DNA of 64,000 nucleotides from Laetmonice hystrix. Its lineage: Eukaryota. The stretch covers positions 50,530,001-50,594,000 of the forward strand of contig OZ249437.1 in assembly GCA_965235115.1 (NCBI GenBank). The letters run 5' to 3'. The translations under genes and the position numbers were made by a program. This document shows, in pieces, positions 44,586-60,960 of the stretch (its first letter is position 1; each line of letters opens with the position of its first letter). The notes below the pieces were generated by a model. That model was given only the letters and a program-made list of their open reading frames with translations. It did no database searches and had not been told where the DNA came from.

Positions 44586-46470
44586 ACAGTCTACGACAGT
44601 GCCACTGGATTACCTTAACAGTCAATGTTCGGTAGAAATAATGTGTAGCTCTATCTAGGAAAATATGGATTCCGTCTCATTTCGGAAGATGTGTGTAGGG
44701 GGGAGGGTCCATTGTCCTGCTCGACCACCATTTGAAGCTCCTTTATTAGGGGAGTGGCGGTGGCCTAGTGGGCATGGATGTCGACACCTTATGCTATGCG
44801 AATGGGTGCAGTAATCTTGGGGCCGGGGTTCGATTCCTGTAGAGGACTATACAACTTTTCTCTTTAGGGACATTGTCAAAGTAATTGGGTTACCCCTGAT
44901 GCCCGTGCATTTTAAAAAAGAAAAATACAGTCAGGTCGGGTATAATATAGGTTCCTATTCACCCCGGGGTTCGATTCCTGTAGAGGACTATACAACTTTT
45001 CTCTTTAGGGACATTGTCAAAGTAATTGGGTTACCCCTGATGCCCGTGCATTTCAAAAAAGAAAAATACAGTCTACGCCAGTGCCAGGATTACCTTAACA
45101 GTTAATGTTCGGTAGAAATCACGTGTAGCTCTATCTAGGAAAATATGGATTCCGTCTCATTTCGGAAGAAGTGTGTAGGGGGGAGGGTCCATTTTCCTGC
45201 TCGACCACCAAAGCTCCTTTTTTAGGGGAGTGGCGGTGGCCGAGTGGGCATGGGTGTCGACACCTTATGCTATGCGAATGGGTGCAGTAATCTTGGGGCC
45301 GGGGTTCGATTCCTGTAGAGGACTATACAACTTTTCTCTTTAGGGACATTGTCAAAGTAATTGGGTTACCCCTGATGCCCGTGCATTTCAAAAGAAAAAT
45401 ACAGTCTACGCCAGTGCCAGGATTACCTTAACAGTCAATGTTCGGTAGAAATCATGTGTAGCTCTAACTAGGAAAATATGGATTCCGTCTCATTTCAAAA
45501 AGATGTGTGTAGGGGGGAGGGTCCATTGTCCTGCTCGACCACCAAAGCTCCTTTTTTAGGGGAGTGGCGGTGGCCTAGTGGGCATGGATGTCGACACCTT
45601 ATGCTATGCGAATGGGTGCAGTAATCTTAGGGCCTGGGTTCGATTCCTGTAGAGGACTATACAACTTTTCTCTTTAGGGACATTGTCAAAGTAATTGGGT
45701 TACCCCTGATGCCCGTGCATTTCAAAAGAAAAATACAGGCAGGTGGGGTATATAGCGGCCTAATCACACGCCAGTGCCAGGATTACCTTAACAGTCAATG
45801 TTCGGTAGAAATCATGTGTAGCTCTAACTAGGAAAATATGGATTCCGTCTCATTTCAAAAAGATGTGTGTAGGGGGGAGGGTCCATTGTCCTGCTCGACC
45901 ACCAAAGCTCCTTTTTTAGGGGAGTGGCGGTGGCCTAGTGGGCATGGATGTCGACACCTTATGCTATGCGAATGGGTGCAGTAATCTTAGGGCCTGGGTT
46001 CGATTCCTGTAGAGGACTATACAACTTTTCTCTTTAGGGACATTGTCAAAGTAATTGGGTTACCCCTGATGCCCGTGCATTTCAAAAGAAAAATACAGGC
46101 AGGTGGGGTATATAGCGGCCTAATCACACGCCAGTGCCAGGATTACCTTAACAGTCAATGTTCGGTAGAAATCATGTGTAGCTCTAACTAGGAAAATATG
46201 GATTCCGTCTCATTTCAAAAAGATGTGTGTAGGGGGGAGGGTCCATTGTCCTGCTCGACCACCAAAGCTCCTTTTTTAGGGGAGTGGCGGTGGCCTAGTG
46301 GGCATGGATGTCGACACCTTATGCTATGCGAATGGGTGCAGTAATCTTAGGGCCTGGGTTCGATTCCTGTAGAGGACTATACAACTTTTCTCTTTAGGGA
46401 CATTGTCAAAGTAATTGGGTTACCCCTGATGCCCGTGCATTTCAAAAAAGAAAAATACAGTCAGGTGGGG
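44586..46470 (+). repeat. About 360-bp tandem array (about 5 units) with a tRNA-derived SINE-like Pol III head in each unit
   Basis: Heads ggggagtggcggtggcc(t/g)agtgg start at 44749, 45225, 45559, 45919 and 46279. A box TGGCCTAGTGG, B box GGTTCGATTCC, A-rich tail. 45421-45780 and 45781-46140 are identical, and 46141-46440 matches them. Confidence 0.9.
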
Positions 46471-49367: not shown

Positions 49368-52300
49368 TCAAAACGTAGTCAAATCGTCGCTAGATTCAAT
49401 CTCGACGACAACTTTGCCAGGTTTCAAGACGTCCTTCTCTTTCTTTCCCTTGCCGTACAGGTCGATGGTTAACGTTGTCCTGTTGTCGTAACTAATATCA
49501 TGAATCTCTCCCTGTCCCAGGAACTCATCGATCAATGTCTTGTGGTTCATCACCTGTACAGTATCAAAATGGTAACTTTAAACTCACGAAATCTGGTCGT
49601 AAACCTTCTCAACTACATTGTATGTCGTTCTATAGGCAAGAATAGCCTACGAATAGCAATAAAAAGCGCTGGCTCGAAAAAAACGGATTTCGTTCTAAGT
49701 TATAGCCCCATTGTTGCGCTCCATAAGCAGTGTGATAAGCATGGTAAACGCCGTATGGATTCATAAATCACTAATTGGTATGTAATAACCTACCTCAATT
49801 ATAATCGGGTGGCCAGGGTTCTTACGATAAAACAATAAATTAAAGATCCATTCTGGGTTGGCTGCCTCGCGACAGAATCCACTTTTGACCGTTTCTCCTT
49901 CGCATTTCACCGATACCATCGGATTTGGAACTGTAACATTTATATTGATTCCGGTAATTAGATATAAGTAGGACTTTTGAGTTTTGTTGGAGTTCTTTGT
50001 AACAGCAAATCTCTGAAGTAAAATAATATCAAACAGATAGGGACCTTATTACAGACCTCCTGCACGGGTAAACTGATATAAACACTTACTCTAAAACAAC
50101 GAATGAAAATAAATGTGCGAATACGTAAGACATATAAAGATACGTACGGACATTTGGATCCTTTAAACTTTGTAGACCTTCTGCACTCTTCAGAGATACA
50201 CGAGTGACAAGGGCGTATCCCTTCGCGCACGTGCCTTTCTTGGGACAGTCTAGTTCCAGTTCCCTGGCCGCTGCGCCTGCGCTGGTGTACATCCTGAGCA
50301 AGAACCTGGCAGCAATACCTGGTTCATGGGTCGAAGGAATGATGACGTAACGTCCTTTGTTCAAGGTCAGTCGCTGGAATATACTACGCGCCCTGGTGTA
50401 AGCTGAGACAGCCATCTTGTCCCCGGCAATGTGTACACGATATTTTCTGTTTTCTTCAACCTAGAGAATACAAATGTACGGGTGTGATTTTTTTAAAAAG
50501 AAAGGATGGATATAGTTGTCTTTTAGATACATAATTTCAAAAGCATGAAAAACCAAAATAGCTGGCATACATGATAGATTTGCCTACAGTAGGCCTACAG
50601 ATATAAAAACACCTTTGTATAGGCCTATACCCGTGGGGAGACACCCCACAACAAAAAGCCCCTAGGATCGTTCACTGACCCTCATGATGTGGAATCCGAT
50701 TTGTTTGTGGTCCTCGCCCGTCATCTTTCCACCTCCGGTGTCGTGTTGTTCTAGTGATACCATGAAAGTGTCGCCGGAAGCCGGGGTTATGTCGAACACG
50801 TACTGAAAAATACACAAAATTTACCGTCTGTGTCTTATTTGTCGGAAGTTATCGGCCCTACATGCCACGAGGACATACAAAAATGGGGGCATCGACGCAC
50901 CGAGCTGTCAAAATGTGATAGTATAGGCCTTGTCCTATACTACTCCGGTAATCAAGGCTGCTTTCTCAACTTATTAAAAGATTCTTTACAAAAAAAAGGT
51001 GGAACCATAGGCTTATAAATAACACAATTTTTACCTTTTCAAACGTTGCTATAGAAGGTGTGTATTGTTACCTGTGGGTTGTATAGGAATTTGTCAGGGA
51101 AATCCTCGCAGCCCCCGGCCCTGTCTCTCTTTGTGCCCCGGGCCCCCACAGTCCACTCCCCATGCATCATCGTTTCGTTCCAGGTCTTCTTCAGCGAGAA
51201 GAACGAAGTGTTCACGAAGTGGCAGATGTCTAACTTGGTGAAGTATTTCAAAAAGTCCTCGTATGCCATCCTGGAATAATGAGCATGCAGTCTGAGATCT
51301 AAATACGATACAGGCCTACATTATTGTGCATGGTGGAGGGCGAGATGCTAAACATTGCTCAGCGAGCCCGGAGCCTATAATTGACATAGGCCATAACACT
51401 CATAGAATGTAGAAAACTAATTTCTTACCAAAATTCTCCCTCCTGTTGAAATGTGATGCCCATTTCTTCTCTGTCTGTTAGTGACAATGATTTCCACTCC
51501 GGAGAACTGGCGGCAACAAGAAAACAATGTATTAAACAACTGCCATTACTATCTTATGGGTTCCATCGGAAGTCATATAATTATCAACAATGATAATATA
51601 GTAGGTGTAGGTTTTTTAAAGACCGCTGCGGAATTAGCGATTGAAACTTTAAGCCTACAAGCTGATTTTCACTGCATGGTTTTTTCAAATGCGGCAAATA
51701 CGCCAAAAACACATAATGTGGCTTAATTGACTCTACAGAGGAATAATTATTTACTGCTTAACTTCCCATAACAGTGGTCCGTCCACCTTGGCATTTCAAA
51801 GATACAAGTTACGAGTTAGCACTGCTGGATCCAAAATTTGGTTATGGTCGTTGGCTCTCATGTTTGTACAATGGGGGGTCAGTATAAGGTTAGTCTCAAA
51901 GGTGCCGCACATTTGTCACACAGAAGAAGGTTTTGGATCAACCAATGCTATGGGTCGTCTTACTCTTTCGACCATGCCCCCTTCCACTCCGTCGACGGAT
52001 TACGTAACCGTACAAGACGTAGACGGCTAACTCCCCAGGCAACCATTGCCGACTTCAAACCATGTCGTGCTTGTGTGCAGTGAGCAGTGAGCCTATTCTC
52101 AATGGACGTGCATATAGTTATGGTTATAAATGTGAAAAGGTTTATAAATTACAGAGACCATACAGATCCACTATCTCATAAGCTTGTTCATGACCTTAAG
52201 TGTTCCAAGGTCAAAGAAGACCATCACGATTTAGATTAAGAATGCGGTGCAGGTACTTGGACTTCAGTTATGGAATCGTTATGATGTATAAGTAGGCCTA

Positions 52301-55158
52301 CATGTACGTTGGGTTCTGTGGTGGATCTCTAGAGTCTCTATACAACAAACAAGCCATGGCACCAAACAAGACAGTGGCGGATCCATGGGGGGTTAGAGGG
52401 GTTGCCCCCCCCCCCGGCCCAGGCAGCCAATTTATCTTTTTTCTCCATTGAACTTTCTGAATTGACCATGCTAAACCTCCCCTAAACAAATTCTCCCCCT
52501 TAACCCCCCCCCCTTCTGACCACAATTCTGGATAGATCCGCCCCTGCAGGAACACAACCGTGTATAGATCCAACTCATGCACTCACTTAATAACGGTCAT
52601 TCTGCCACATGGGACGTGACAAGACAGACTGAATCACTGAACCACCCACAGACACAATGTACCAAATCTATGTACATTACAAATGTACAGCCTGAAAGAA
52701 GTATTAGTATCGATGCTACACAAATGTAGGCCTACATATTTGAAAATGTATTAGTGCTGTTCCCTTTCAAGTTTGTGCTTTTTAGAATTGTTCACCTGGA
52801 TACCTGGGCCCGGTTTCTTGGTGGAGCTTGAGCTGAAATTCTTAGCTCAAGCTCAAGGATTTGGAGCTTGAGTCAAGGATTCTCGGCTCAAGCTCAAATT
52901 TGGGTTTCACAGTCATGTCCCAGCTCAAGCTCAAGCTCAACGGCCGTCTGACTGTGAAACCCAAATTTGAGCTTGAGCCGAGAATCCTTGGCTCAAGCTC
53001 CAAATCCTTGAGCTTGAGCCAAGAATTTCAGCTCAAGCTCCACCAAGAAACCGGGCCCTGAAAACGGACAATATAGAAACAAAGAGAACGTGTAGTTTCT
53101 GGTTAGCTTCAATGTTTGAAAGGAAGAACATATCGAAATATGTTAGCAATCAGTGAATGTGAACAGCACCTCTATAAGAAAACAATAGGAAATCAAGTCA
53201 GGCCTTGAAAAAGTTCACATACTCGTCGGACCATTTGCCGGTCCACTCCTGCGTGCCCCAGGGGTTACTGAGTCGGAGGAGGCGGAGTCGGTCCATACCC
53301 ACCGCCGCCTTCATTCCCTTGTTAACCCTGATGTCCCGTACGTTCGTCACACCATACCCGTGCCCTTTGATCAAACCTTCGTCAGCATCCGACCCGATCT
53401 CCTCTCGGCTACACTGAACCAGAAATAGACCGATAAGACATTCTGAAGAACTAGCAGTGAAAACACACAACTTAATGGACTATACCTATTTGAACTTGTA
53501 GATCTACAGTTTCTTGGTAGTATTGCCTCGAATATCAAGGACATCAGTATTGGTATATGACATGACTGCACAGATCGCTTTGACAAGTTTGAGCTAAGAC
53601 AATGTCATATAGGGATGGTAGGCATGTACTTGTTCTTAAACGAAACAAAAAAGGTATCATAGCAAGACTTACACTGATGTTACAAATGATCATGGCCTTG
53701 TTTTCAGACGCAGAATGCAATTCCCAGAAAAGGCTGTCAGCAACATCCGGATCATCGAGATGATAATCAATGAGGTCCAACTTTTCGGCCACCCCTCCAC
53801 TAAAGTCAACTAAAGCTTCGGCGGCGTGTCCGGTCATGAGGGTCTCGTAGTCGCCGTACAACCTGACAGAGACCGAGGGAAGGACTTTTATAGAAAGTGA
53901 GACACATCAACGGGGCCGTTCTCGGCTTCAGAGGAAATAATCGATGATGATCGACCTTTGGGAAGTGGCCGCTCTTCATAACTAATGGACCAACAGCCCT
54001 TACTTGGGAATCTCCTCAGAACGCATGAATGCAATTTGTTGGTTGTCTGAAGGCCAAATTATAATGCAGTGGCGCAGAAAAGGGGGGAAAGTATGTTCCC
54101 CCCCCCCCCCAAGATTTAGCTCTTGGGCCGTGTAATAACAATGGGTACATTTGCATACATTTTCCGAACATAATAGAACTGGAGAGTAATGTAAGCATAT
54201 TCCTATCCTGTTAATCTGTTTTGATCACCATTTTTTGCTGTGAAGCTTGGTGTTATTGTAAGCTTGGTGTAGTGATACGTGTATGGTAGGCCTATGTATT
54301 GTGCATACTTTGCATAGGCTTTCTCCAGAAGGGCGCTCCAGAACTCGTTCCTTGATTTGGAGTGACAGAAAACGAGCTTGCCGTTTTTCGTGGGTAGCAT
54401 GTCATCGACAACAACATCGACCCATTCACCGAAACGCCAGAATTGAAAGTGAAAGATGCCAGCATATGGATTTTCTACGCCCCATTCCTGTTCCTTCTGA
54501 TTGGGGATAACCTGTTTGAAACCAAAATTGAAACGACATGCTCATCTAAACGCCTCTATGGGGAACAACCAAATACGGAATGCAGGAAAAAACTTTTTTA
54601 TAACTTTGTTGTTGTTGTTGTGTAGCGGTCCTCATTTATAGTTATATGCTGAGATATGTACCTTCGCAAAGAGTTTGGGTTCGATAGCGAGGCAGGAGCA
54701 TGCGCTGACGAACCACATGTTGCCGAGTTCTCCCTCGTTGAGGTCATCACAGGTGGCGCCATCTACGACCAACCTGGGCACCTTGCACAGTTCCTGCAAC
54801 ATCCGACTCCATTTATAAGCATATGTTATGAGGCAGGTGTATTGTGTGTCGTTCAAGAAACTATTATGCAATTTAGGCCCTATAACATAAACACACATCC
54901 AGAGATGGGGCGTAGGCATTGAACGTCTAGATCTCAGGCCAGGCATATTGGCCTAGTAGTGCAAATCTTTAAGTTGCAAGGGCAAAGTGCATTTCCAGTT
55001 ACCTTTGGGCGTTTCCATTCTATGTCCTTGTCTATCCGACTAAAGAACAAGGACTTGTGAGTTGGAGGGAATTCAGGGTCGACGAAAAGTTCCCCTTTCT
55101 TGAGTAAACTTTTCTTGGTGCTGTTGTACTTTTGCCCCTTGAATGACGTTCCAAACAT
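49368..55158 (-). CDS. CAPN5: Calpain-5/6 (TRA-3)-like protein with CysPc, domain III and C2 domains, 635 aa; catalytic Cys replaced by Met
   Basis: Exons on minus: 55158-55003, 54793-54662, 54511-54309, 53862-53673, 53413-53223, 51506-51429, 51270-51072, 50802-50680, 50460-50148, 49930-49794, 49553-49368. GT-AG introns with compatible phases, 1908 nt. Motifs: [92 protein letters not shown]-terminal C2 (KCEG..DEFLGQ) and no penta-EF hand. An in-frame TGA lies 2 codons before the ATG, and AATAAA lies about 40 nt after the stop. Confidence 0.95.
51964..52064 (-). pseudogene. Divergent duplicate of the 3' half of calpain exon 5, inside intron 5
   Basis: Reads [33 protein letters not shown]-ga|gtaag versus exon 5 [32 protein letters not shown]-ga|gtatg, with the same phase-2 donor position. 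Confidence 0.7.
52372..52546. mobile_element. MITE of the CAGTGGCGGATCC family
   Basis: TIRs cagtggcggatc / gatccgcccctg. Confidence 0.7.
52807..53057. mobile_element. Near-perfect palindromic PIF/Harbinger-like MITE
   Basis: ggcccggtttcttggtggagcttgagc ... gctcaagctccaccaagaaaccgggcc with TSD CTG on both sides. Arms of about 110 bp are built from gagcttgagc/gctcaagctc motifs. Confidence 0.9.
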
Positions 55159-56380
55159 TGTTCAAATTCTCTGGAAAAAGAACGAACAGGCAAATGTATA
55201 TCTTTTGATTTCGACATTTTCTCAATTAAGCCCTATCTACATTGAATTATGATGATTGCTCCTTTCGAAAATCCTATACGTCCATACCTGAGTCGGAATG
55301 GCGCTGGCCCAATCAACCTGAACAATACATCACATCACAATAGGGACGCTGGATAGCATTGGCAGCGGTATGCTTCAACCCTCTTGTTTCGATTTGCATG
55401 GGTGGTTGAACGATCAATAGATTAATCAATACAACTAACGTACTTGTTTTGTATAGCGAAAGATCTGTCTGGCTTCTTACTGGACAAATTGGTGCATTGT
55501 GAAGACATTTACCAAATGTATTGGATAAGATACGCTTCAAGAGAGTAAGCGTCTTTGAGATACTTGATGTTTATCCATAATAGAACTCGTGATGTAGGGC
55601 GTGCACGCGTGCGTCTGTACGAACGCTGTAGTATAGGCTCGTACGTCCATAGGAGCCTGTACATCTATAAGTCATTATACGTATACTAACCAAATCAACA
55701 GACGGCGTGAAACTATCGTGGTAGTGGACATGATGAAATCGTATGGGACCATGCCCATACGATTAGGTTTTAGGTGCAGGTTTCGTCGCCGACAAAAAAA
55801 TCGGCTTATAGTGGACACCCGGCTTTTAGTCACAGATTAACGGGTAGGCTATCTATAGATCTATAAGGCGGGTAAATCATAAACCCATGGAAATGAGGCC
55901 ACTTGTTAATACAACTTGATACAACCTGTTGATTGGTAATCCTTCGAGTAATTCTGCAAGGTAATTCTGGGTAAGAAGATCAGTGATACATTATACATTT
56001 ACTTCTATATGCTAGGGAAAAAGGTGATTGGATATTTATAATAGCCGTATACATTAACAATTAGGCCTGTACGCTAGCTGTTAAAATGATGCATACATTG
56101 CAAAACCGCATGTCCTGATCCATGTTTAAAAGTAAACTTCTCTGGGAGTTAACTGTGTTAATGATGTAGTATATAGATATTACATGTATGATGCCTTCTA
56201 TGGGGATAAGCCTACCGGTCTGGATAGGCCTACCGGTTTGGATGTTCATCGACGGAACGTACAGCGATCTTGGGGTGCGAGTCAAACATGTCATCATAAC
56301 AGTATGCATATTGGATTATTTATACAGTATATCCCTATGTCCCCGGCCAACGATGGTATCAATAAAATATAAAAGTCAGT

Positions 56381-57062: not shown

Positions 57063-58364
57063 TTAATTCATTAAGAGAAAAGCTTTTTAAGGAGCATTTT
57101 GCTATTGCTATATTGTAGGCCTAGATCTATGTGCCTCCATAGGATCACAGCTTGGTACCAAGAAGTTTCATGCATTGATTATAATGCCAATATGGTGGTT
57201 GTCATGCACGTCAGCATTATTTCCATTGCCACAGCTATACAGAAAACATAATATTTAATCAAGGCAGGATGTCTTTATATATATATTTTTAAATAATCCT
57301 CGGGAAATATTGGATAAAGGCCTATATATGTCGCCGTTCATTTTGAACGTTTAAAATGATGAAAACGTCACCCATGCATGGCTATTTTCACGATACCTGT
57401 TTGAAATGGCTGTTTATACGGGAGTGCATTGATTATATTGGAATGCCATGACATTCTGCCATCAACACCCAAGCTGCAACAAACCATATAGTAGCAGGCC
57501 CAATAGCTACACTAAAGGTGGACAGAATATTATGGATCCTAATTGCTCTCTTAGCATTCTAATAAGGCTCAGATCAATCTCGAATCTAATGGTGACCCTT
57601 ATCAAACTAATTACAAAGTATATATGCCCTGGGCCTATAGAGCAAGGCCTTTTGACCGAAGATAAAATAAAGGGAACTGACGTTTTACCTGTAATCGTCC
57701 CATACACGGTTGAAAATATCCTGTTTGAATGTCGGCTGGTGTCGGGGGTCTGATGGTGTGGGGTTAACCTTGGGTACATCCACCCACGGTTCTTACAGTC
57801 GGTGTGGCGGCGCTGGCAAGGTGTGACAATCCTGTTGGTGTCCCAGTGTTGATGTCGCTGCCGTTGGATACGGGACGCCCAGAGCGGGACGATGGCTGTG
57901 GTGCCTGCGAGTTCGCACCGTGGTCGTCACCTGTCCGTCGGTCCGGACGCCGTGCTCAGCCGATAACGTGCAGCAGGTTCGCCGACACCAAACCCTGGCA
58001 ACATGACGCGGTTTGCACAGACGGGCCGCCATCGACGTCTCTCTGTCGGGAATATACGATTTCTGAGGGATTGGGCCAGGGAGCCTATACGGCAGAAGAA
58101 ACCACAGAAATGCTATTAACGTGAGGTAGCACTCCTCCCCTCCAACCGCACCAGTGGAATAACATTTTCACCATTTTGGTGTTGATTAAAAACGCAAGCT
58201 TCGCAGCTGCTTGAAGATAACCCTGCTGCGCGTCACGCAATCAGGAGGAACCACTCCAACTGAAGCTTTGTATCGTGATACTGGCTGGCATACCCACAAT
58301 TAAACCGTTGTAGAAAAAAAAATGTCACACTTACCGCTCCTCAGTCAAGTTTTCCTTTATGTCC

Positions 58365-58793
58365 AAATACCACCCGGTGTCACTTAACGTGAAAAGGTAC
58401 CTATCAAACGACCATCTACTAATACCAAATACCACCCGGTGTCACCTAACGTGAAAAGGTACCTATCAAACGACCATCTAGTAATACCAAATACCACCCG
58501 GTGTCACTTAACGTGAAAAGGTACCTATCAAACAGCCATCTACTAATACCAAATACCACCCGGTGTCACCTAACGTGAAAAGGTACCTATCAAACGACCA
58601 TCTAGTAATACCAAATACCACCCGGTGTCACTTAACGTGAAAAGGTACCTATCAAACGACCATCTAGTAATACCAAATACCACCCGGTGTCACTTAACGT
58701 GAAAAGGTACCTATCAAACGACCATCTAGTAATACCAAATACCACCCGGTGTCACTTAACGTGAAAAGGTACCTATCAAACAGCCATCTACTA
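58365..58793. repeat. 62-bp minisatellite (7 units)
   Basis: Unit aaataccacccggtgtcacttaacgtgaaaaggtacctatcaaacgaccatctagtaatacc, starting at 58365, 58427 and so on. Confidence 0.97.
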
Positions 58794-60960
58794 ACACTAA
58801 TCTCATTTCGCAATTAAAAATAGGAATATAAAGAAAAGAATTAACTGAAACACTTTGCCCATCTTTACACATGTTTATTTTTTCACCAGTGTGGTCTGAT
58901 ATATTATTAAGTAATGATCAAGTCATTCTCACTATAATGGATATGAGATGCATAGTTCGTGAAATGATGTCTCAGTACCTGGAAATAGTTTTCTCAGACC
59001 CACAAAGAAATAGAAATTAGTAGACTGTAGCAGCGGCAGCAGTAGCAGCAAACTGTACAAAATATTCGTGAGACACATCACATCCAACATTCAACAAATA
59101 CATCTGAAACTCGAACACAATACTGCGTGGTTTACTCCGACAGGCCTACAGTTGGGATGACATACACAGAACAAAAGCAACGTCATCGCCTTCATAACTT
59201 ATTTATCCGATGGAAAACTGATGTTTCTTTATCTGGCTTCTGGAGTGTAAATACATGTAAATACCTCATCATCACGGTCACTGATATACTTTGCCCACGC
59301 CCTGTACGAAAGATATACGACACAACGAGCTGTGCAATATGTCCCCCATATTGTAAACCATTCTATCATTCACAATAGCTCTCTCTTCATGATTTCAGTG
59401 AAATCTGTCCGCACGCTAACCAGACATAACATCTAATCAGAGTCGCTGATGAGAAAAGCACTGACGAGACCACGAACCATTAAACATTTTCGGTTGTTAA
59501 TTTATCTACCTTTTCTTCACGTCCTTCACACACTAGCGTTCTCTCTCTCTTATCACACACGATCCTTTCGATCTGCTATAAGTCGTAAAAATTTACAAAG
59601 TGCTATAATATTATGTCGTAAAACATTAAAACACATGCGATTTACAAAAAGATGCACTGATGACATCCACAACTCGACAGGTGACAACAAATGAACATCA
59701 TGTAATGAGAAACTTTCAATAGGGTCCCTAATGACTGCAGACACTGGGATCTGTACACATCAAGAACAGCATAACAATAACACGTGAGGAAGGAGGGACA
59801 ATCAGAATAGCAACGACACCATAGCCCATACCTGGACAAGGAAACTAATGGTAACCCTGATCTAACCACCCTACCGAACCTCTCAACGCGGGCACGTCGT
59901 CAGACATTGGCTCATACGAACCCCTTCCCCCTCCCCCGCCTCCTGGCGACAATCAAAGTGATGTACAGGAGCCTGAGGCCAGCCACTTTAGTCAGAATAT
60001 TCCCCATGCTTAAAACGATCAGTCCGAGCCAGGAATAACAATTTATGGGTGGTAACACTAATCAAGAGGTATCGATGAATCTTTTACTTCCAAAAGCGAG
60101 TCTGAAGTAAGGAAAGTTATAAGCCTTCAATATCAAGCCTCCTAATAATGCTTCCATTCTTAATAATGCTTATAACATTTTGGAGACGCAGCCTTCCTTA
60201 ATCAATCTACATACGAAGAACTAAGTAGATGAGGGATAGTATGATAATTTATGCTCCACCCAAAACAAAAAAATAAATTAAGAGTCAGTCTTGCCAGCAT
60301 TTTCCTTCACCATTTTCTTCAAACCCTCTGATGTATTCGAATGATATTTGCACACGAAGCTTGACCCTGCAGCTGTAACAGCGCACGACATTTCAAATAT
60401 TTATTCTTCCCGGACCCATCCTTTAAGCGGACATTCCCAGCAACATTCGCAAGGGCTCTGCAATGAATGATCAATGCCATGTTTAAAATCTACAACTAGG
60501 AACATCCACAGTATATACGGTACTGGTATATGCACTGTTCACATCTGGATCTATGATGACTGTTACAAAGCTCAGAGACCTAGAACACATCTAGCACAGA
60601 GCAGTGAATCACGCACGGTAAACAGATAACAAATCTACGACAGATATCATGATTAGACTCACTCTACAACCCTACTGCTATTATACACCTCTTGTACATA
60701 GTTATGAACTTCTTCGCAATGTTTGTATCTCATCTCTGTATCTTGTATACTAAAGTTTCAAAGACCTTCACATGGTAGGCATACAGTAAAAATGATTTTT
60801 ATTTAGACATTTTTTCACGTTTTTAGTGTGTTGGACCCTGTCAAAGTAACTAGTTACCACTGCACAGGCACTAGCGCCTACCACCAAAATGTTGGGTTCT
60901 GTATATACTTACACATACTATTACTCTAACAACATTCATTTCTATTAAAATCGGGTTATT

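What the first reader, a model, noticed from the sequence alone, without database searches (positions are those of the whole stretch)
54662..54793. Invertebrate calpain-5/6 pseudo-protease: catalytic Cys to Met and oxyanion Gln to Glu in an intact gene
Seen: the active-site exon reads [21 protein letters not shown] where active calpains have Q-G-x-x-G-N/D-C-W. The Cys codon is ATG (54718-54716), differing from TGY at all three positions, so a single-base error is unlikely, and the upstream Gln is Glu. Catalytic His (KGHGY) and Asn (SNPWG) remain, and all 11 exons are open with good splice sites (635 aa). Known: eutherian CAPN6 lost this Cys (to Lys) and works as a non-proteolytic microtubule/cytoskeletal regulator, whereas CAPN5 and nematode TRA-3 are active. 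Inference: an independent, convergent origin of a CAPN6-like pseudo-enzyme in an invertebrate lineage, probably a paralogue beside an active CAPN5 elsewhere.
Basis: partly seen in the sequence, partly recalled or inferred. Interest (0 to 1): 0.75.

Follow-up and report, generated by a model that had tools for sequence, protein, structure and literature searches.

The report
Cysteine-less calpain-5-like gene in a worm
This worm gene encodes a complete calpain-5/6-type protein whose catalytic cysteine is a methionine, so it cannot cut proteins in the usual way; it belongs to an old paralogue group, shared by molluscs, annelids, brachiopods and ribbon worms, that has lost this cysteine several times while the rest of the protein stayed conserved.

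Summary
On the minus strand, exon 54793-54662 reads ...[10 protein letters not shown]..., with ATG (54718-54716) at the catalytic Cys site and Glu at the oxyanion Gln site. His245 and Asn277 are kept. The gene has 11 exons, all with GT-AG introns, and encodes 635 aa. It aligns end to end with calpain-5-like proteins.

Contigs of three DNA runs from one sample keep the ATG. A fourth, RNA-like run has a contig spliced exactly at the exon 10/11 junction. It does not cover the active-site exon.

An active paralogue ([13 protein letters not shown], RNPWG) lies on another chromosome.

The loss is not specific to this lineage. The gene sits in a strongly supported clade of 45 lophotrochozoan "calpain-5-like" proteins, separate from CAPN5 proper and from vertebrate CAPN6. 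Only 6 of the 45 keep Cys. The tree needs at least 7 Cys/non-Cys changes, and an AU test rejects a single Cys-less clade (p = 3e-5).

Of 130 columns invariant in CAPN5 proper, the window protein keeps 118. The 13 relaxed columns include the Gln, Cys and His sites. Six of the seven listed exonic variants are synonymous.

Verdict: a real, selected pseudo-protease that arose independently of CAPN6. It is a new member of a known kind. Its function is untested.

The parts
55003..55158 (-). Exon 1 (start ATG at 55158-55156; 52 codons), N-terminal part of the protease core
   Evidence: Pfam Peptidase_C2 profile positions 1-32; in-frame stop upstream
54662..54793 (-). Exon 2, active-site exon: Glu72 at the oxyanion Gln site, Met78 (ATG 54718-54716) at the catalytic Cys site
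   Evidence: no variant at the codon in X1/X2 contigs
54309..54511 (-). Exon 3, protease core PC1
   Evidence: Pfam Peptidase_C2 E = 8.5e-30
53673..53862 (-). Exon 4, protease core; carries the only listed non-synonymous variant (53715, H213Q)
53223..53413 (-). Exon 5, PC2 with His245 (KGHGY) and Asn277 (SNPWG)
51429..51506 (-). Exon 6, end of the protease core
51072..51270 (-). Exon 7, end of the core and linker into the CBSW domain (domain III)
50680..50802 (-). Exon 8, CBSW / Calpain_III
50148..50460 (-). Exon 9, CBSW / Calpain_III and start of the C2 region. The donor C|GTACGT was chosen for phase and for fit to homologues; it has no RNA support
49794..49930 (-). Exon 10, C-terminal C2 domain (first part)
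   Evidence: Aligns in order with the C2 region of homologues; the donor is confirmed by a spliced X4 contig
49368..49553 (-). Exon 11, C2 domain (second part) and stop codon
   Evidence: the acceptor is confirmed by the X4 joint 49551->49792 (cut +2), which skips 240 nt with GT..AG on the minus strand

Best explanation
The gene is an intact, spliced member of a lophotrochozoan paralogue of CAPN5/TRA-3-type calpains (protease core + CBSW + C-terminal C2), and it is under purifying selection. The thiol nucleophile is replaced by Met78 and the oxyanion-hole Gln by Glu72, so it cannot carry out cysteine proteolysis. It is a pseudo-protease. This is the usual state of the whole paralogue clade: the nucleophile position drifts (T, S, A, G, V, P, R, M) while the surrounding cleft (G73, N77, W79, F80, Asn277, Pro278, Trp279) and most of the fold stay fixed. 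Inferred, not shown: the protein acts non-proteolytically, most likely as a Ca2+- and membrane-responsive binder or scaffold that still engages calpain-type partners through the preserved cleft, CBSW and C2 domains. This would resemble the way eutherian CAPN6 and insect 'dead' calpains work. Proteolysis in this family is left to the active CAPN5 paralogue on another chromosome.
For: Sequence and gene model: (ATG codon; 11 exons, 635 aa, all GT-AG).
Domains: Pfam Peptidase_C2 and Calpain_III on the exons. End-to-end alignment at 55-58% identity with P0176, P0178, Owenia and Lingula proteins, which carry C2.
Nucleophile site: it aligns with the Cys of the human CAPN5 core 6P3Q.
Clade: 45 lophotrochozoan rows, SH-aLRT 100, and the window groups with annelids. 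Only 6 of the 45 keep Cys. At least 7 Cys/non-Cys and at least 8 His/non-His changes are needed. The AU test rejects one Cys-less clade, p = 3e-5.
Selective relaxation: of 130 columns invariant in CAPN5 proper, 95 keep the same residue in at least 90% of clade-2 rows, and the window keeps 118. The 13 relaxed columns include Gln72, Cys78, His245 and their neighbours 82, 234 and 246. The Cys site ranks 112 of 616 in entropy (2.58 bits; median 1.34) and lies between invariant positions.
Selection: 6 of the 7 listed exonic variants are synonymous (P about 5e-4 against a 79% non-synonymous expectation). Against relatives, dN is 0.32-0.39 with dS saturated.
Transcription: a spliced X4 contig spans the exon 10/11 junction.
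Active paralogue.
Precedent for functional dead calpains: PMC3731218 (abstract seen), PMC7521557, PMC11387712, PMC3315469.
Against: There is no RNA over the active-site exon, so the codon is not confirmed in cDNA. The DNA runs come from one sample that may be the assembled individual. Other X4 contigs run into introns, so expression of a fully spliced mRNA is shown for one junction only. The variant table was truncated (57 differences not shown), so the 6:1 ratio may be incomplete. No close relative was available, so recent dN/dS could not be measured. No biochemical or localisation data exist for any member of this clade, so the binder/scaffold mechanism rests on analogy. The exon 9 donor was chosen by phase and homology alone.
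Confidence: 0.8

Rival explanations
1. The Cys-to-Met change is a recent innovation specific to this species or a narrow lineage. This is the narrow reading of the first-stage inference.
For: Met at this site is rare: 2 of 45 clade members and 1 of 150 representatives.
Against: The annelid relatives already lack Cys: Paralvinella T, P0176 T, L035 T (ACA), L033 S (TCC), Lamellibrachia R. So do most molluscs, Lingula and Tubulanus. Only the identity of the residue (Met) may be recent, since ACG to ATG is one step.
Confidence: 0.07
2. The protein is still a protease. It would use another nucleophile (for example the nearby Cys84 or Cys86) or a non-thiol mechanism with the retained His245 and Asn277.
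For: His, Asn and the Trp of NPW are retained in the window protein, and the cleft residues are conserved. A review notes speculation that CAPN6 'may employ different sites' (PMC7521557).
Against: Cys84 and its neighbours are equally present in active CAPN5 (ACS[CS]LA), so they are not a compensating novelty. Within the clade, His is itself replaced in 20 of 45 rows and Gln in 25 of 45, which is not expected for a conserved alternative catalytic mechanism. Cys-to-Ser or Cys-to-Ala calpains serve as dead controls (PMC5650170 S3 Fig legend; calpain-3 entries 6BDT and 6BGP carry S and A at the site).
Confidence: 0.06
3. The gene is a decaying pseudogene, or the Met codon is an assembly or sequencing artefact.
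For: X4 contigs run into introns 2 and 3, and no RNA covers exon 2.
Against: All 11 exons are open with canonical splice sites. Six of 7 listed variants are synonymous. The protein keeps 118 of 130 CAPN5-invariant positions. A correctly spliced contig exists. Three runs agree on ATG. All three codon positions differ from TGY. Orthologues in several phyla show the same loss.
Confidence: 0.04

Closest known systems
Eutherian calpain-6 (CAPN6)
   Same: Same domain plan (CysPc + CBSW + C2, no PEF). The active-site Cys is replaced while the gene stays conserved and functional (PMC3731218 abstract; PMC7521557).
   Different: The origin is independent. Vertebrate CAPN6 and CAPN5 form one clade apart from this gene. 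The residue is Lys in human CAPN6, and Met here (T/S/A and others in relatives). Here the oxyanion Gln is also changed. A microtubule or GEF-H1 role is untested.
CAPN5 / nematode TRA-3 (active Tra-type calpains)
   Same: End-to-end alignment at 43% identity to a rodent CAPN5. The best solved match is the human CAPN5 core 6P3Q. Exon boundaries are shared with the own-genome CAPN5 paralogue.
   Different: Those proteins keep Q/C/H/N. The window protein has E/M/H/N plus the clade signatures GHGY (not GHAY) and Gly234 (not Glu).
Lophotrochozoan 'calpain-5-like' proteins in public annotation (e.g. Paralvinella, Lingula, Mytilus, Haliotis, Lottia); probably also the second Tra calpain of Aplysia (AplTra2)
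   Same: Same clade (SH-aLRT 100), 55-58% identity, same loss of Cys. Hastings et al. 2017 list two Tra calpains in Aplysia (PMC5650170).
   Different: The passages of that paper found by my term searches, including Table 2, say nothing about lost catalytic residues in Tra calpains. I could not check AplTra2's sequence. The window protein is one of two with Met; the other is on a bivalve-like contig, L034.
Drosophila CalpC, insect 'dead' CalpA/B and C. elegans CLPR proteins
   Same: They are calpains with substituted catalytic residues that are retained and, where tested, biologically active. The loss arose repeatedly (PMC11387712; PMC3315469).
   Different: Those belong to classical or other calpain subfamilies, not the C2-bearing Tra type. 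Several have lost all three triad residues, whereas here His and Asn remain.

Membership tests
Calpain superfamily (CysPc, Pfam Peptidase_C2) | Recognisable calpain protease-core fold sequence | tested here: met
   Six exons hit PF00648 in order along the profile (positions 1-32, 33-76, 74-141, 140-180, 205-254, 255-280), with E down to 8.5e-30.
Tra-type calpains (CAPN5/CAPN6/TRA-3) | CBSW (Calpain_III) domain after the core | tested here: met
   PF01067 on exon 9 (E = 3.6e-12) and weakly on exon 8.
Tra-type calpains (CAPN5/CAPN6/TRA-3) | C-terminal C2 domain instead of a penta-EF-hand | tested here: inconclusive
   Pfam C2 did not fire on exon 10 or exon 11 scanned alone. The 635-aa protein does align end to end with P0176, whose residues 512-602 are PF00168 C2, and the KCEGETVK motif aligns in homologues. 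No PEF-like sequence is present.
Catalytically competent cysteine protease (clan CA, family C2) | Cys nucleophile in the GxCW motif | tested here: not met
   Met78, codon ATG.
Catalytically competent cysteine protease (clan CA, family C2) | Oxyanion-hole Gln, catalytic His and Asn | tested here: not met
   The Gln site is Glu72. His245 and Asn277 are present.
Vertebrate CAPN6 orthologue group | Phylogenetic grouping with vertebrate CAPN6 | tested here: not met
   CAPN6 (gar, crocodile, birds) groups with vertebrate CAPN5 (SH-aLRT 98-99), away from the window's clade.
Lophotrochozoan calpain-5-like paralogue clade (informal) | Grouping with brachiopod, annelid, nemertean and mollusc 'calpain-5-like' proteins; GHGY and Gly234 signatures | tested here: met
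   Clade of 41-45 rows with SH-aLRT 100. Gly246 occurs in 98% and Gly234 in 83% of the clade, against invariant Ala and Glu in CAPN5 proper.
Expressed gene | Spliced transcript | tested here: inconclusive
   One X4 contig joins exon 10 to exon 11 exactly. Other X4 contigs are unspliced, exon 2 is not covered, and no run is on record as RNA.

The most novel reading that the evidence does not exclude
A Tra-type calpain paralogue found in all four sampled lophotrochozoan phyla (molluscs, annelids, brachiopods, nemerteans) acquired an essential non-proteolytic role early. The clade-wide GHAY-to-GHGY and Glu234-to-Gly changes occur even in members that keep Cys, which fits an early shift. Catalysis then became dispensable, and the nucleophile was lost or drifted at least seven separate times across the sampled phyla. 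That would be a natural replicated experiment in how an enzyme becomes a pseudo-enzyme. It was not described in the papers I could search.
Probability: 0.55. Interest if true: 0.55.

Novelty: new member of a known kind. Interest (0 to 1): 0.42.

Why it matters
Dead calpains are already known: CAPN6, CalpC, insect dead calpains and the C. elegans CLPRs. A single Cys-less calpain is therefore not a surprise.

What this gene adds is scale and repetition. One conserved C2-bearing paralogue across molluscs, annelids, brachiopods and nemerteans keeps about 90% of the CAPN5-invariant positions. At the same time, its nucleophile, its oxyanion Gln and often its His are free to change.

That gives a clean comparative system. 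Lineus, Mactra and Sinanodonta keep the full Q/C/H/N set, Owenia and Liolophura keep Cys, His and Asn with Glu at the Gln site, and sister taxa lack Cys. Comparing them could show what a calpain fold does when it does not cut.

It also flags that "calpain-5-like" annotations in these phyla should not be read as active proteases.

Tried and rejected
- Gene models: my first two models (625 and 628 aa, weak exon 9 donors at 50178 and 50169) were replaced by the phase-1 donor C|GTACGT at 50148. This gives 635 aa and fits homologues better.
- Own protein in the databases: the window's own protein was not among the best 120 hits listed by either protein-database search.
- Fragment origins: the cluster look-up of the nearest fragments gave no organism names.
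- dN/dS: no close relative was found. The three genomic contigs fetched (L033-L035) are only 57-61% identical, so dS is saturated and dN/dS could not be computed.
- RNA: no run is on record as RNA. X4 looks like RNA but does not cover exon 2.
- C2 domain: Pfam C2 was not detected on single exons.
- Structure: no prediction was attempted, because the spliced protein has no reference form and long sequences must not be typed.
- Rooting: rooting with one distant calpain (P0034, branch 3.07) is too weak to decide whether the duplication is lophotrochozoan-specific or older.
- Literature: six searches found no description of this clade's Cys loss. The library is incomplete, so this does not prove absence.

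Full report
**1. The observation**

The minus strand of window 54793-54662 is a 132-nt exon bounded by ...ttgcag| and |gtacat. It reads [44 protein letters not shown]. The codon at 54718-54716 is ATG. It differs from TGT/TGC at all three positions, and the residue six positions upstream is Glu rather than Gln.

Pfam Peptidase_C2 matches the exon at profile positions 33-76. The best solved relative is the human calpain-5 protease core (6P3Q), in whose alignment the Met lies under the Cys of GNCWF. The other PDB rows with S or A at that place are engineered inactive calpain-3 cores.

**2. Gene model**

Three-frame reading and splice-site inspection give 11 exons on the minus strand:

| Exon | Coordinates |
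|---|---|
| 1 | 55158-55003 |
| 2 | 54793-54662 |
| 3 | 54511-54309 |
| 4 | 53862-53673 |
| 5 | 53413-53223 |
| 6 | 51506-51429 |
| 7 | 51270-51072 |
| 8 | 50802-50680 |
| 9 | 50460-50148 |
| 10 | 49930-49794 |
| 11 | 49553-49368 |

- Every intron is GT..AG. The CDS is 1908 nt (635 aa) with a stop two codons upstream of the ATG.
- The exon 9 donor (C|GTACGT) was chosen for reading phase and for fit to homologues. It has no RNA support.
- The catalytic-site residues are Glu72, Met78, His245 (KGHGY) and Asn277 (SNPWG).
- The exons hit Peptidase_C2 in order along the profile and then Calpain_III.
- C2 is not detected on single exons. The whole protein nevertheless aligns end to end with P0176 (55.6% identity), which has Pfam C2 at residues 512-602. 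It also aligns with Paralvinella, Owenia and Lingula proteins (55-58%) and with a rodent CAPN5 (43%).

**3. Reads**

The window is G000:C2:50530001-50594000 of a 627-Mb genome. Four runs of one sample hold the stretch, and none is on record as RNA.

- Contigs of X1-X3 cover 54317-55250. All differences of the X1 and X2 contigs are listed elsewhere (54528, 54529, 54586, 54598, 54626, 54912), so the ATG stands in them. X3 has two differences that were not shown.
- These runs may be the assembled sample, so this only excludes an assembly slip.
- X4 behaves like RNA. One contig joins 49551 to 49792 (cut +2), skipping 240 nt with GT..AG on the minus strand. That is exactly the exon 10/11 junction of my model.
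- Other X4 contigs lie in exon 9 or run from exons 3 and 4 into introns. Exon 2 is not covered.
- Transcription and correct splicing are therefore shown at one junction. The codon is not confirmed in cDNA.

**4. An active paralogue**

A Peptidase_C2 scan of the genome finds about 17 calpain loci. Only one other locus has a similar active-site exon, at G000:C10 near 24.13 Mb. It reads [35 protein letters not shown], and its Cys codon is TGC.

Its exons match CAPN5 proteins from the N-terminus into the C2 region, with GHAY and RNPWG. In the trees it falls with CAPN5 proper.

**5. Relatives**

A search of 1.84 billion representatives with exon 2 returned 150 calpain pieces, 108 of them with Cys. 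The nearest ones (66-82% identical) have T, S, R, Q, K, N or M at the site and mostly Glu at the Gln site.

Full-length searches gave proteins annotated "calpain-5-like". Their states at the Gln/Cys/His/Asn sites are listed:

| State | Taxa or rows |
|---|---|
| Cys lost | Lingula V; Paralvinella T; Lamellibrachia R; Tubulanus G; nearly all gastropods (T/S/G/V/A, often also His to Q/K/L/F); most bivalves (T/A/S/P) |
| Cys kept | Owenia, Lineus, Liolophura, Solemya, Sinanodonta, Mactra |
| Second protein with the full Q/C/H/N set, in the same species | Mytilus, Mactra, Mercenaria, Solemya, Liolophura |

**6. Trees**

IQ-TREE (LG+C20, quick search; the four trait columns were removed in the second run) gives two groups.

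- One group holds vertebrate CAPN5 and CAPN6, arthropod, hemichordate and lophotrochozoan CAPN5, and the own C10 paralogue.
- The other is a clade of 41 rows (later 45) made only of lophotrochozoan proteins, with SH-aLRT 100.
- Inside that clade the phyla sort as expected: brachiopod, annelids, nemerteans, then chiton, gastropods and bivalves.
- On this tree at least 7 Cys/non-Cys and at least 8 His/non-His changes are needed.
- Forcing all 39 Cys-less rows into one clade costs 436 log-likelihood units (AU p = 3e-5). The group was defined after I had seen the tree.
- A second Met (also ATG) sits on a contig that falls among heterodont bivalves (L034), so it arose independently.
- Annelid relatives use ACA (Thr) and TCC (Ser). 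Met here is one step from Thr (ACG).
- The single distant outgroup is too long-branched to date the duplication.
- Some Cys residues inside the clade could be chance re-appearances (Ser, Gly or Arg to Cys is one step). I cannot tell this from retention.

**7. Constraint**

- Of 130 alignment columns that are at least 96% invariant in CAPN5 proper, 95 keep the same residue in at least 90% of clade members, and the window protein keeps 118.
- Only 13 columns are relaxed. They include the Gln site (72), the Cys site (78), the His site (245) and their neighbours 82, 234 and 246. GHAY to GHGY and Glu234 to Gly are near-fixed clade signatures, present even where Cys is kept.
- The Cys site has entropy 2.58 bits (rank 112 of 616; median 1.34). 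It lies between invariant G73, N77, W79, F80 and A83. Asn277 is kept in 44 of 45 rows.
- Within the sample, 7 of the 40 listed variants are exonic (0.37% of exon bases, against 0.85% of intron bases). Six are synonymous and one is H213Q. This gives P about 5e-4 if 79% of random changes were non-synonymous. That figure ignores transition bias, and 57 variants were not shown.
- Against L033-L035, dN is 0.32-0.39 and dS is saturated.

**8. Mechanism**

Shown:
- The thiol nucleophile and the oxyanion Gln are absent.
- The fold and cleft are conserved.
- The gene is under purifying selection and is at least partly transcribed.
- An intact paralogue exists.

Inferred:
- The protein acts without cutting, probably as a Ca2+- and membrane-responsive binder or scaffold that uses the preserved cleft, CBSW and C2 domains.
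- The precedents are eutherian CAPN6, where Cys is replaced by Lys and which has microtubule-stabilisation and GEF-H1/Rac1 roles (PMC3731218 abstract; PMC7521557), and insect dead calpains that have developmental roles (PMC11387712).
- No member of this clade has been tested experimentally in the papers I found.

**9. Literature and novelty**

- Joyce et al. 2012 reported 344 calpain-like proteins with incomplete triads across kingdoms (PMC3315469).
- Dead calpains arose at least three times in insects (PMC11387712).
- Hastings et al. 2017 list two Tra calpains in Aplysia. The passages found by my term searches, including Table 2, do not mention catalytic-residue loss in them (PMC5650170).
- Six searches found no description of the lophotrochozoan Cys-less Tra paralogue.

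The sequences are public and the kind of thing is known, so I rate this a new member of a known kind. The clade-wide, repeated loss is the more interesting part.

Noticed in passing
window 51963-52148, minus strand (intron 5 of the calpain gene): An open stretch ends ...[21 protein letters not shown] and is followed by GA|GTAAGA. That is the same phase-2 donor layout as exon 5, which ends ...[21 protein letters not shown] + GA|GTATGT. It looks like a decayed duplicate of the 3' half of the His/Asn exon (the WG of NPWG is missing and there is no GHGY upstream), or an unused alternative exon. X4 does not cover it.
   Followed up: partly
window 52285-53080 (intron 5): Contig depth rises from about 55 to 4,000-32,000 in the DNA runs, with many loose ends, C-rich flanks and inverted joints. 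This is a very high-copy repeat inserted in the intron.
   Followed up: no
window 44967-46463: A tandem array with a 360-bp period, 4.3 copies, 94% matches. I did not test that reading.
   Followed up: partly
window 58363-58794: A tandem array with a 62-bp period, 7 copies, 96% matches and no indels. It produces a ladder of near-identical 37-aa mechanical ORFs on the minus strand.
   Followed up: no
L034:9974-10108 (ENA contig ctg29062 of ERZ26273219): A second, independent Met (ATG) at the calpain Cys site, here with the Gln kept (QGEIGNMWF). The contig's gene falls among heterodont bivalves in the tree.
   Followed up: partly
window 53715 (exon 4): The only listed non-synonymous variant, A>C on the plus strand. 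It changes CAT to CAG (His213 to Gln) and is seen in contigs of all four runs, so the assembly allele may be the minor one.
   Followed up: partly
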